From positions 1 through 45,658 of the forward strand of contig FLMG01002269.1 in NCBI GenBank assembly GCA_900088475.1: a stretch of 45,658 nucleotides of DNA, in the 5' to 3' direction. This DNA comes from Hyphochytrium catenoides (Eukaryota; Protista; Hyphochytriomycota). A program made the position numbers and the translations under genes. The notes below the pieces were generated by a model, which worked only from the letters and a program-made list of their open reading frames with translations, did not search any database and was not told the DNA's origin. Below are positions 29,601 to 32,600 of this stretch, one piece after another. Position 1 is the stretch's first letter; every line of letters begins with the position of its first letter.

Positions 29601-32600
29601 TGAAGGAGATCCATGATGGTAACCAGCAAAGAGCCATCTAAGCTCTCCTCCAAGAGAATCATCAGCAACTGCTTAACGAATCGAATGCTCTACGTAGTCA
29701 CCATAGCAAGAAGCCATATTAGTAACAATAGCCCCAACGGGGAGGAGGAAACAACGTTGAAAAACCCTTGAAGGTATTCAATGAGGCCAATTTCTTTCAG
29801 AGGCGTGCTTACGGCAAACTGATTCTTAAAGGACATAAGCTCTCGCTCTCCACCCAAAGGATTGGTACGTTATAAGATAGCAAAAGAGGTTCAACTGAGG
29901 TAGATTGGATAGACCTAGTTGCAGGAACGCAGATAGTTTCGTTGCTATACCTGAAGCCGCTTGCGATTGAAGACCCGAAGCTCTGGTGCCCCTCTTGTGA
30001 CCATCAACTTTAAACTATCTAAAAGAAAGTGTTGGACCTCCACCGCCGTCCGTCGCCACATCTCAAAGTGTAAAAGGAACTGCTGAGCGGCTTTCAGGTT
30101 CAAAAGTACTTTCTCGGAACTGAATAGGGAGGAGGGTCCTCCTTCCAAAGTCCCCACAAGAGCGAGGAGGATGTCCACACTCTGGCGGGTGAGAAGGTGG
30201 AGCGAGGACTTCTCTTTCAATAGATGAGCCATGACTTCATATCCTGCCGTCAAAAGGTAAGTTTGGACAGCAGGCAACGATTGAGGAAAAGACTTAAACG
30301 TCGAGTCAGGAAGTAAGGCTTAGTTTTCCTAGTAGAGTTAGGCTATTGCTATGATAAGCATAGACGCTTAGCGATTAGAAGCAATTACTGTCAGCTTCAC
30401 AAGGTAGTTACCATGCATTCTCTCCATTGCTCTTAGGTTCTGAGCGTGTGCCCGCAAGCTAGCGGCTATGATCGTAAGAACTGTCTCAAGCTCCTAAAAT
30501 GACATTGCTGGTGAGCCGTAGGAGGAGCATGCTATTTGTTTCTAAAAACACCACCCATAACCCTACTGAAGGACTTGCTTCTCATGACTAGCGTATCGCA
30601 TGGTCCAATCTCGCTGTGTGTTACCTGCGATGTTTGACAGCTTTCCAGCAGAAGGAACGTCAATGGGACGCCACCATTACAGACTGCCGCCAAACAGTCC
30701 GCCAGCCGTTTAGGTCGAAAAGCAGCGGTCCCTCCCATTAACTGACCGTTCATTAGTTTATTGCCTGCACGGAACACATTTAGGATTTTGAGACTAGACA
30801 AGTGATTTCTGAGCCGTCTACGCCTCCATAAAAGTTCAAAGGAGGTAGTTCATCATCTCAGAAACCGAGGAGGTTCCGGTTCGAACCAGATTCTAGCCTT
30901 TGTAAGGGAAATCTCGAACGTATAAACAAACGTCGGAAAGGTCCATGGCCAGAGGAAGCCCTTACCAGCTGTGTTCAATATCATGAGGGGTCCAACCTGG
31001 GCACCTAGGCTTGCCGTGTGTCTGGAACTGAACGCGAAGACAATCCTGTCCACTGGTAGCGGAAGAGACGTACTAGGCACAGCACTGGCAATGTCGCGCA
31101 AGAGCCCAAGGGAGGATACATTATCATCCTTTCGGACCTTTGAGGCAGTAGTGCCAGTTCCTGGCCGTACAGCTGAGGCCGCTGCGGCTGCGCTGTCTAC
31201 CACCTTAGTGAACTCATCACGAATCTCTTTTGCGGCCTTATGAAGACGGGGGAAGCGGCATAGTAAAAAGGTGAGCAATTGTACAGAACTTGTCTGAGAA
31301 AGGGACAGAAGGGAGACAACTACTTAACAGTGTCGTACCTGTGTTGCTGCCTGACCAGGGGTGGCCAGCTCTCTTTGAAAGTCATTGAGAATACTAATGT
31401 TGGCAGGGCGCAGAATATCCAGGCACACTGGCATCCGGCGATGTCCGTCCTCTCCATAGAACAGCCCGTCATAAGTCGGCCCAAGTGCAAATATCGCATT
31501 AACTGCTCCTGGTCCGAGACACTCGTCTAGCAAGTAGCATGGACCCAGGGCCCAAGCCGCGATAGAGCGCCGGCGGAAGGATGGCGGAGTCCCAATGACT
31601 CCCGACACCGGGTGATTGGGATTCGGGGGCTGACATCAGAGAAGCAGAGCAGATAAGTTTGGTGTGAGATCTAACCTTGATGCAGAGGGTAAAAGGAGGA
31701 GTGCCAACGCTAACTACCTCAAAAAGGAAAGGCATGGGTAAGGTGAAAGAAGGCATTGACAGCGATCGGTGGTACAGGGCGGAAGGGACTCCCGCTACAG
31801 AAAAGCAGTTAGGGGTCCTGATAGATGCGAAGGAACAAGCTTGAGTCATTGTACTCACATTGGGGTATGACACCTTCTCCGAACCAACGAGAAGTCCATT
31901 GATGTAAAGAGAAGCCACGCTGCTTTGGATTCTCTGATGTGCATGGGTTATGGTCAGGTGATACCAGCGTCCTTCTTCCAGGTACGGGTGCTTGAAAGCT
32001 ACCGCCTTGCTCAGCTGGGAAGATGTGCGCATATGCACAGCTCCTCCTTCTATGAACACCTCATCCACACACTTATTGTCTCCTGACCGGAACCGGAAGA
32101 GGAAAAATGGTGGTGGAGAGCACCTAAGCACAGTAAGAGTCAGCTAACTAATAACTATAAAACCTGTGTTATGCCTCAGCCGCAGAGAGAGAGAGACTGA
32201 GTGGCTGGGAGCAATCCAATCTTACGTTGCGCACTTGCCGCCACCATTATGTCGTGCGGTTAGACATCCCTTGCATGCGATATGACCGCACTTGAGGGAA
32301 TGCGGATCCCTCCAACTCTAAGGGCAAACAGGCAAGATATTGATAGTTAGAGTCGGGCGGCATCCGTAGAGTGCGCGTGATAACAGCGAGACGTATAAGC
32401 TATTCGATGCGAACGCCGAGCCAACAGCAACTGAGCTCTGAACCTATCGATGGAGGTCAGCCAAAGAAAGCTACAAAGAGTCCACCGAGAACTGACTTCT
32501 CCACTCGAACAGAGATGCTGATCAATACCGACTGTGGGTCTGACCTCTCGGCAAATGATGCATCTCTGCTTCATGGCTAACATATTATACTCTTCTAATG

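What the first reader, a model, noticed from the sequence alone, without database searches (positions are those of the whole stretch)
32120..32562. Hidden RING-HC finger inserted inside the ConA-like domain of a SPIRRIG/LvsA/Alfy-type BEACH protein
Seen: three exons join through canonical GT-AG sites to give [38 protein letters not shown], with all eight Zn ligands at exact C3HC4 spacing; the last Cys appears only after a phase-2 junction (AC|G TGC), which is unlikely by chance. It sits between the ConA-like strand [15 protein letters not shown] and the later strands FLFRF...[12 protein letters not shown], i.e. in a loop of the beta-sandwich. Established: RING-HC domains usually recruit E2 enzymes as E3 ubiquitin ligases; the characterised members of this BEACH clade (WDFY3/Alfy, Dictyostelium LvsA, Arabidopsis SPIRRIG) are trafficking/autophagy scaffolds that, to my knowledge, lack a RING. 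Inference: a BEACH scaffold carrying its own ubiquitin-ligase module, coupling cargo ubiquitination to membrane sorting or selective autophagy. No single ORF in the track shows it.
Basis: partly seen in the sequence, partly recalled or inferred. Interest (0 to 1): 0.75.

Follow-up and report, generated by a model that had tools for sequence, protein, structure and literature searches.

The report
RING finger nested inside BEACH protein
A giant membrane-traffic scaffold (BEACH) protein of this water-mould relative really does carry a complete RING zinc finger, the hallmark of ubiquitin ligases, spliced from three exons into a loop of its lectin-like domain. The same insertion is in every water mould examined but in no other BEACH protein retrieved, and no paper found describes it.

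Summary
On the minus strand, exon 1 (32706-32545), exon 2 (32317-32226) and exon 3 (32123-31859) join through GT-AG introns of 227 and 102 nt. Together they encode a C3HC4 RING (32562-32120) with all eight zinc ligands.

- **Junctions:** Each exon, aligned separately to oomycete orthologues, covers intervals that abut to the residue.
- **Conservation:** 31 of 34 retrieved oomycete or oomycete-like relatives have a contiguous 38-residue RING at this site. These include Phytophthora, Pythium, Lagenidium, Saprolegnia and Achlya. All eight ligands are invariant.
- **Absence elsewhere:** The Nannochloropsis, plant SPIRRIG, WDFY3, Thecamonas and Naegleria relatives have only a short loop there.
- **Structure:** An AlphaFold model of an orthologue (pLDDT above 90) places a helix plus the RING between two β-strands of the ConA-like sandwich.
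- **Host gene:** It has the ConA-like, DUF4704, PH-BEACH, BEACH and WD40 domains and no FYVE. The genome is probably Hyphochytrium catenoides.

Ligase activity is only inferred. The E2-contact positions are partly canonical and differ between lineages. UniProt already auto-labels the Saprolegnia orthologue "RING-type domain-containing protein", but I found no paper and no earlier scan note on it. This is a new variant of a known kind. The joined spliced protein was never searched or folded.

The parts
17941..38444 (-). Approximate extent of the multi-exon BEACH gene. The N-terminal limit is uncertain. Assembly gaps lie inside it at 21712-21779 and 28193-28250.
   Evidence: Pfam hits exon by exon. 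Collinear tblastn of orthologue P0002 residues 1198-3721 onto 32326 down to 18830. N runs.
32852..32920 (-). End of the upstream exon. It encodes the first ConA-like strands (..[16 protein letters not shown]) and has the donor CAG|GTAAGC.
   Evidence: aligned to relatives
32545..32706 (-). Exon 1. It encodes the ConA-like strand [15 protein letters not shown], the pre-RING helix with the conserved Tyr at -8, and the first CxxC pair (ligands 1-2).
32318..32544 (-). Intron 1, 227 nt, from GTCAGA to TTAG, with a CTAAC branch-like motif. Phase 0.
32226..32317 (-). Exon 2, 92 nt. It is the RING core and encodes ligands 3-7 (C-x-H-x2-C-x2-C-x10-C).
   Evidence: Pfam zf-C3HC4 21.5 bits and zf-RING_UBOX 23.1 bits. 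Single copy in the genome. Abuts its neighbouring exons on the orthologues.
32124..32225 (-). Intron 2, 102 nt, from GTAAGA to TTAG, with a CTGAC branch-like motif. Phase 2.
31859..32123 (-). Exon 3. It encodes the eighth Zn ligand (Cys) and then the ConA-like strands ([11 protein letters not shown] ... RWYHLTITH ... LYINGLL).
   Evidence: Laminin_G_3 E 1.9e-5. 49-56% identity to P0001-P0006.
32120..32562 (-). Genomic span of the RING-HC domain, from the first to the eighth ligand codon, introns included.
29948..30319 (-). DUF4704 alpha-solenoid segment (Neurobeachin/BDCP).
   Evidence: 32.1 bits against a cut-off of 22.9
22431..22724 (-). PH_BEACH domain exon.
   Evidence: E 1.8e-11
19933..21916 (-). 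BEACH domain, spread over at least four exons and interrupted by the N gap at 21712-21779.
   Evidence: PF02138, E from 5.6e-15 to 1.3e-45 per exon
17941..19366 (-). WD40 beta-propeller exons. No FYVE domain lies downstream.

Best explanation
Shown: the window holds the (probably Hyphochytrium catenoides) orthologue of a BEACH protein found throughout the oomycetes. It belongs to the SPIRRIG/WDFY3/LvsA class. A module of about 60 residues, one helix plus a complete eight-ligand RING-HC finger, is inserted in the hairpin loop between two β-strands of the ConA-like domain. In this genome the RING is coded by three exons. The insertion is conserved across oomycetes and this hyphochytrid, and it is absent from the Nannochloropsis, plant, animal, Thecamonas and Naegleria relatives. 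It therefore most likely arose once, in the common ancestor of the Pseudofungi.

Inferred (about even odds): the RING docks a ubiquitin-charged E2. The scaffold's PH-BEACH module binds cargo tails in human relatives. With a docked E2, the scaffold could ubiquitinate bound cargo, a partner or itself at endosomal or autophagic membranes. That would feed cargo into ubiquitin-dependent sorting without a separate ligase.
For: - Sequence and splice sites.
- Pfam RING hits on exon 2 alone and on full-length orthologues: P0002 zf-C3HC4 21.6 bits against a cut-off of 21, and P0008 zf-C3HC4_3 25.4 bits.
- Exon-wise alignments abut to the residue.
- An exhaustive HMMER search with exon 3 found eight relatives, all with the RING ending exactly where the match starts.
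- 28 of 31 relatives, then 3 more Saprolegniales proteins, have the RING. All eight ligands and the Tyr at -8 are invariant in 23 unique sequences.
- Taxa and names.
- The AlphaFold model has pLDDT above 90 for residues 181-385. The order is strand 182-193, helix 197-209, ββα RING 213-250, strand 254-262.
- The host fold is a ConA-like/pentraxin jelly roll.
- For a ligase role: Ile or Val follows the first Cys in 20 of 23 relatives and in the window. Leu sits at the BRCA1-L51/Cbl-W408 position in oomycetes. The only PDB sequence matches are to RING E3 ligases (MGRN1, RNF2, TRAF6, BRCA1), and all are weak.
- SPIRRIG interacts physically with the ESCRT-associated factors LIP5 and SKD1 (PMC5701936). 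BDCPs act as cargo-sorting adaptors through PH-BEACH (PMC11554844).
Against: - No activity data exist.
- The E2-contact surface is only partly canonical. No family member has Pro after the seventh ligand (Val-Val, or Ala-Thr in the window).
- The residue after the last Cys is Asn (oomycetes), Gln (P0019) or Ser (window), not the usual Arg or Lys 'linchpin'.
- The helix position is Leu in oomycetes but Arg in the window and in P0019. The putative E2 surface is therefore not conserved between the two lineages.
- Pfam scores sit at threshold.
- No transcript evidence was available.
- Two weak alternative donors (after 32591 and 32582) could bypass the RING in frame.
Confidence: 0.5

Rival explanations
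1. The RING is real and zinc-binding but not catalytic. It serves as a structural or assembly module, for example for dimerisation of the scaffold or docking of a partner. Inactive RINGs such as BARD1 and BMI1, and RINGs that hold together large trafficking or signalling scaffolds (HOPS/CORVET, GATOR2), work this way (comparison from general knowledge).
For: - Pro after ligand 7 is missing, and there is no Arg/Lys linchpin.
- The helix contact residue differs between oomycetes (Leu) and the window or P0019 (Arg).
- The RING has very high model confidence relative to the ConA-like sandwich, which suggests rigid packing.
- A conserved helix precedes the RING, as in dimerising RINGs.
Against: The aliphatic residue after ligand 1 is conserved across both lineages. 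Many non-ligand surface positions are strongly conserved in oomycetes. That fits either a catalytic or a structural role. Most eukaryotic RING-HC domains that have been tested bind an E2 or pair with a RING that does (general knowledge).
Confidence: 0.4
2. In this organism the RING exon is not part of the main transcript. A RING-less isoform made from alternative donors predominates, and the RING is a decaying relic.
For: Two in-frame, stop-free splices from GTATAA (last exon base 32591) or GTTAGC (32582) to the exon 3 acceptor exist on paper. The exon 1 donor GTCAGA is not the strongest type.
Against: - All eight ligands, the exact 38-residue spacing and the Tyr at -8 are intact after a long divergence from the oomycetes.
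- Exon 2 has good splice signals.
- Plain exon 2 skipping is out of frame.
- The alternative donors are weak and would delete conserved residues.
Confidence: 0.05
3. The RING is a chance pattern or an over-read of intron sequence, and no RING is encoded.
For: None beyond the fact that the pattern needs two splices to appear.
Against: Homologues carry the same domain contiguously at the same residue positions. Exon 2 alone hits Pfam RING models. No such pattern occurs in shuffled sequence.
Confidence: 0.01

Closest known systems
Oomycete orthologues in public databases. Examples: Saprolegnia parasitica XP_012201551.1 / A0A067CMM3 (UniProt auto-name 'RING-type domain-containing protein'), Phytophthora oleae KAL3661442.1, and Phytophthora citrophthora KAK1945269.1 ('BEACH domain-containing protein lvsA').
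   Same: They have the same domain order and the same helix-plus-RING insertion at the same ConA-like loop. The ligand span is the same 38 residues, and exon 3 is 42-56% identical.
   Different: The window's RING is split by two introns. It has Arg instead of Leu at the helix contact position and Ser instead of Asn after the last Cys. The organism is a hyphochytrid, not an oomycete (inferred).
SPIRRIG (plants), WDFY3/Alfy (animals, Thecamonas, liverworts) and LvsA (Dictyostelium), one class of BEACH-domain proteins.
   Same: They are the nearest named relatives by PH-BEACH similarity (50-57% identity). They share the alpha-solenoid, ConA-like, PH-BEACH, BEACH, WD40 plan (PMC11554844).
   Different: None of the roughly 95 retrieved members has a C3HC4 motif. 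The loop at the insertion site is short or low-complexity. WDFY3 has a C-terminal FYVE, which is absent here and in the oomycete orthologues.
RING-bearing membrane-traffic scaffolds: Vps8/Vps11/Vps18 of HOPS/CORVET, and WDR24/WDR59/MIOS of GATOR2 (from general knowledge, not tested here).
   Same: They are large beta-propeller and alpha-solenoid 'protocoatomer-like' proteins that carry a RING. In them the RING serves assembly and, in some reports, ligase activity.
   Different: Their RINGs are C-terminal appendages, not nested inside a beta-sandwich domain. There is no BEACH domain and no detectable sequence relationship.
TRIM and other RING + SPRY/B30.2 ligases (from general knowledge).
   Same: They combine a RING with a ConA-like-fold beta-sandwich that binds substrate.
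   Different: Their domains lie in series and are separated by coiled coil. Here the RING is inserted within the sandwich's own chain.

Membership tests
RING-HC (C3HC4) zinc finger | Eight Zn ligands with the spacing C-x2-C-x(9-39)-C-x(1-3)-H-x(2-3)-C-x2-C-x(4-48)-C-x2-C. | tested here: met
   The window has C-x2-C-x11-C-x-H-x2-C-x2-C-x10-C-x2-C across the three exons. The spacing is identical and the ligands are invariant in 23 unique relatives.
RING-HC (C3HC4) zinc finger | Score at or above Pfam's gathering threshold for a RING model. | tested here: met
Exon 2 alone scores zf-C3HC4 21.5 against 21. Orthologue P0002 scores 21.6 against 21. Both are marginal.
RING-HC (C3HC4) zinc finger | Cross-brace fold with a beta-beta-alpha core. 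| tested here: met
   The AlphaFold model of orthologue P0001 shows strands 223-225 and 231-233 and helix 234-242, with pLDDT 89-96. It is a model of an orthologue, not of the window protein.
RING-HC (C3HC4) zinc finger | Canonical E2-contact residues: an aliphatic residue after ligand 1, a hydrophobic residue four after ligand 6, Pro after ligand 7, and Arg/Lys after ligand 8. | tested here: inconclusive
   Ile/Val is present. Position 28 is Leu in oomycetes but Arg in the window. Pro is absent everywhere. The residue after ligand 8 is Asn, Gln or Ser instead of Arg/Lys.
RING-HC (C3HC4) zinc finger | E2-dependent ubiquitin ligase activity. | not testable with these tools
   Needs biochemistry.
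Typical BEACH-domain-containing protein (BDCP) | A BEACH domain preceded by a PH_BEACH domain. | tested here: met
   PF02138 in four exons (E down to 1.3e-45) and PF14844 at E 1.8e-11.
Typical BEACH-domain-containing protein (BDCP) | A C-terminal WD40 propeller. | tested here: met
   The window exons give weak WD40 and beta-propeller hits. They are collinear with the WD40 region of P0002, which scores 32.1 against 27.
Typical BEACH-domain-containing protein (BDCP) | A ConA-like (LamG) domain within an alpha-solenoid N-terminal or middle region. | tested here: met
   Laminin_G_3 at E 1.9e-5 and DUF4704 at 32.1 against 22.9. The model matches jelly-roll and pentraxin folds.
WDFY3/Alfy subfamily | A C-terminal FYVE domain. 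| tested here: not met
   There is no PF01363 in P0002 or P0008, nor in the open segments downstream of the window's WD40 exons.
SPIRRIG/WDFY3/LvsA class (broad) | The PH-BEACH region is closest to members of this class rather than to the NBEA/LRBA, LYST or FAN classes. | tested here: met
   After the oomycetes, the top named hits are SPIRRIG, WDFY3 and lvsA-like. This rests on best-hit names only. No tree was built.

The most novel reading that the evidence does not exclude
Pseudofungi (oomycetes plus hyphochytrids) possess the only known BEACH-family scaffold with an intrinsic enzymatic activity. A RING ligase nested in its ConA-like domain ubiquitinates cargo or partners in cis, fusing cargo selection and ubiquitin tagging in one roughly 3,500-residue protein.
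Probability: 0.45. Interest if true: 0.75.

Novelty: new variant of a known kind. Interest (0 to 1): 0.55.

Why it matters
BEACH proteins are giant, poorly understood sorting scaffolds. Mutations in them cause several human diseases, and no member is known to have catalytic activity.

A conserved RING nested in the ConA-like domain would give one clade a built-in link to ubiquitin. It would also offer a handle on what the enigmatic ConA-like domain does.

The clade is restricted to the Pseudofungi, which include major crop and fish pathogens (Phytophthora, Pythium, Saprolegnia). The module is therefore a lineage-specific feature of an essential-looking trafficking protein.

It is also a clean example of one domain inserted inside another. 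Pfam-based annotation mostly misses it: the RING is absent from nearly all precomputed domain lists.

Tried and rejected
- **Paralogue search** in the own genome with exon 2 and exon 3 found only the locus itself. The source of the insertion therefore remains unknown.
- **PDB sequence search** with P0001 gave only weak RING E3 hits (best MGRN1, E 0.003). With P0002 it gave only the LRBA and NBEA PH-BEACH modules.
- **Foldseek** of the model returned generic ConA-like jelly rolls and pentraxins. This is a generic fold resemblance only, and the RING part was not separately matched.
- **Four literature searches** for RING plus BEACH found nothing relevant.
- **Names for distant RING-less hits** were mostly absent. 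Only Naegleria and Nannochloropsis could be named.
- **Readings rejected:**
  - A chance pattern.
  - Simple exon skipping, which is out of frame.
  - Alfy proper, because there is no FYVE.
  - True loss of the RING in P0058, P0077 and P0078. P0058 has an 11-residue gap typical of a mis-called intron, and the other two lack the whole segment in their gene models.
- The exons were searched separately by reference, and the fold is of the natural orthologue fragment P0001. In one search short junction read-throughs were made inside a script, only to test reading frames.

Full report
**Observation.** The feature lies on the minus strand. Reading the reverse complement and locating the junctions gives three exons:
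- Exon 1 (32706-32545, 162 nt) encodes the ConA-like strand [15 protein letters not shown], a short helical stretch and the first CxxC. It ends ...CIICRE|GTCAGA in phase 0.
- Intron 1 is 227 nt. It has a CTAAC branch-like motif and a pyrimidine tract before TTAG.
- Exon 2 (32317-32226, 92 nt) encodes ligands 3-7 and ends AC|GTAAGA in phase 2.
- Intron 2 is 102 nt.
- Exon 3 (32123-31859, 265 nt) begins G TGC. It supplies the eighth Cys and continues into [11 protein letters not shown]...RWYHLTITH.

The ligand spacing is a textbook C3HC4. Exon 2 alone hits zf-RING_UBOX (E 7e-5) and zf-C3HC4 (21.5 bits against a cut-off of 21) over profile positions 10-38 of 40. That is exactly the part of the domain it should hold. 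No contiguous open frame of the window or of 20 shuffles contains the pattern. Omitting exon 2 puts exon 3 out of frame into a stop.

**Gene context.** Pfam scans of single exons give the following domains, in order along the minus strand:
- Laminin_G_3 (exon 3)
- DUF4704 (29948-30319)
- PH_BEACH (22431-22724)
- BEACH in four exons (21916-19933)
- WD40-type propeller exons (19366-17941)

No FYVE follows the WD40 exons. The gene spans roughly 38.4 to 17.9 kb and contains two assembly gaps. The genome has about eight BEACH loci. The RING exon is single copy.

The assembly has 4,759 contigs. That equals the 4,758 scaffolds plus the mitochondrion of Hyphochytrium catenoides, whose mean intron length is 208 bp (PMC5795050). 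The identification is an inference from these numbers and from earlier scan notes that call the genome a stramenopile.

**Homologues confirm the splice model.** An exhaustive HMMER search of 1.84 billion representatives with exon 3 alone gave 56 hits. The eight closest are P0001-P0006, P0008 and P0019 (41-56% identity). All of them have a contiguous 38-residue C3HC4 RING that ends on the very residue where the exon 3 match begins. In each, the RING is preceded by the WPPxDGY..W strand.

Each window exon was then aligned separately to five of these proteins, and the intervals abut without gap or overlap. On P0001, exon 1 reaches residue 218, exon 2 covers 219-249 and exon 3 starts at 250. A tblastn of the Phytophthora oleae protein P0002 onto the window is collinear from residue 1198 to 3721. 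The window gene is therefore the orthologue.

**Distribution.** The relatives come from Phytophthora (many species), Nothophytophthora, Pythium, Lagenidium, Saprolegnia, Achlya and Thraustotheca, plus unnamed metagenome and SRA assemblies.
- Of 31 relatives, 28 have the intact RING. Three more Saprolegniales proteins bring the total to 31 of 34.
- The three exceptions look like gene-model faults. P0058 lacks 11 residues in the middle of the RING, and P0077 and P0078 lack the whole segment.
- Across 23 unique sequences, all eight ligands and a Tyr eight residues before the first Cys are invariant. The window has that Tyr as well.
- The closest RING-less relative, P0091, clusters with Nannochloropsis BEACH proteins. 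P0105, plant SPIRRIG, liverwort, insect and Thecamonas WDFY3, and a Naegleria protein also lack the RING. They have a short or low-complexity loop at this site.

The simplest reading is one insertion in the ancestor of oomycetes and hyphochytrids, after the split from the ochrophytes. This assumes the proteins are orthologous. I built no tree.

**Structure.** An AlphaFold2 model of P0001, a natural 427-residue fragment, was made with a 26-row alignment. Its pLDDT is 88-97 from residue 181 to about 385. The order of elements is:
- β-strand 182-193
- helix 197-209
- RING 213-250, with two short strands and helix 234-242
- β-strand 254-262

Further strands of the sandwich follow. Foldseek matches the model only to ConA-like, pentraxin-type jelly rolls, which is a generic fold resemblance. 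The insert is about 60 residues where RING-less relatives have about 5-30.

**Likely function.** Shown: a conserved, almost certainly zinc-binding RING-HC fold held rigidly on the ConA-like domain. Inferred: E2 recruitment.

Points in favour of E2 recruitment:
- An aliphatic residue follows ligand 1 in 20 of 23 relatives and in the window.
- Oomycetes have Leu at the helix position that corresponds to BRCA1 Leu51 and Cbl Trp408. That correspondence comes from my own knowledge of those proteins.
- All PDB sequence matches, though weak, are to RING E3 ligases.

Points against:
- No member has the usual Pro after ligand 7.
- The 'linchpin' position after ligand 8 is Asn, Gln or Ser rather than Arg or Lys.
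- The helix position is Arg in the window and in P0019.

Context:
- Human BEACH proteins bind cargo tails through PH-BEACH and act as sorting adaptors. The word ubiquitin does not occur in the main text of that paper (PMC11554844).
- SPIRRIG interacts physically with the ESCRT-associated factors LIP5 and SKD1 (PMC5701936).

I put about even odds on a genuine ligase role and about 40% on a non-catalytic assembly or docking role. HOPS/CORVET, GATOR2, BARD1 and BMI1 are precedents for the latter, from general knowledge.

**Novelty.** The clade label SPIRRIG/LvsA/Alfy-type is supported by best-hit names, with the caveat that there is no FYVE. The architecture is already in public databases. UniProt auto-names the Saprolegnia proteins "RING-type domain-containing protein". 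However, precomputed Pfam lists omit the RING in all but two records, P0072 and P0008. Five full-text searches found no paper that mentions a RING in a BEACH protein. I rate it a new variant of a known kind.

**Limits.**
- All searches used single exons by reference or natural database proteins.
- No transcript data were available.
- Two weak alternative donors could in principle give a RING-less in-frame isoform.
- The library searched for papers lacks most subscription journals.

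Noticed in passing
window 1503-5396 (+): A Slo/BK-type potassium channel gene: Ion_trans_2, two Slo-like RCK domains and BK_channel_a across at least two exons.
   Followed up: no
window 39639-42084 (+): A CLC voltage-gated chloride channel gene in at least three exons. An aldo/keto reductase exon lies at 44412-45044 (+).
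   Followed up: no
window 6381-6439, 21712-21779, 28193-28250: Three runs of N, which are scaffold gaps. Two lie inside the BEACH gene, and one of those interrupts the BEACH-domain coding region. Any gene model here will be incomplete.
   Followed up: partly
window 32582-32591 (-): Two weak GT donors inside exon 1 (GTATAA and GTTAGC) could splice in frame to the exon 3 acceptor and remove the whole RING. This is a possible RING-less isoform, testable only with RNA data.
   Followed up: partly
window 17093-17322 and 650-1431: (CT)n/(GA)n microsatellites. The first cluster lies just past the 3' end of the BEACH gene and produces long Arg-Glu 'ORFs' that are not coding evidence.
   Followed up: no
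P0088 (Achlya hypogyna), P0089 (Thraustotheca clavata), P0073 (Lagenidium giganteum), P0060 (Phytophthora cactorum): Database records of the orthologue are fused to Vps53 (PF04100; named 'vacuolar protein sorting-associated protein 53') or to threonine dehydratase (PF00291). These are probably merged neighbouring gene models. A real Vps53 neighbourhood or fusion in the Saprolegniales would be interesting.
   Followed up: no
P0058 (Phytophthora citrophthora KAK1945269.1): The gene model lacks 11 residues holding RING ligands 3-5 (..KIQDE|GCIEALL..). This is probably a mis-called intron rather than real loss.
   Followed up: partly
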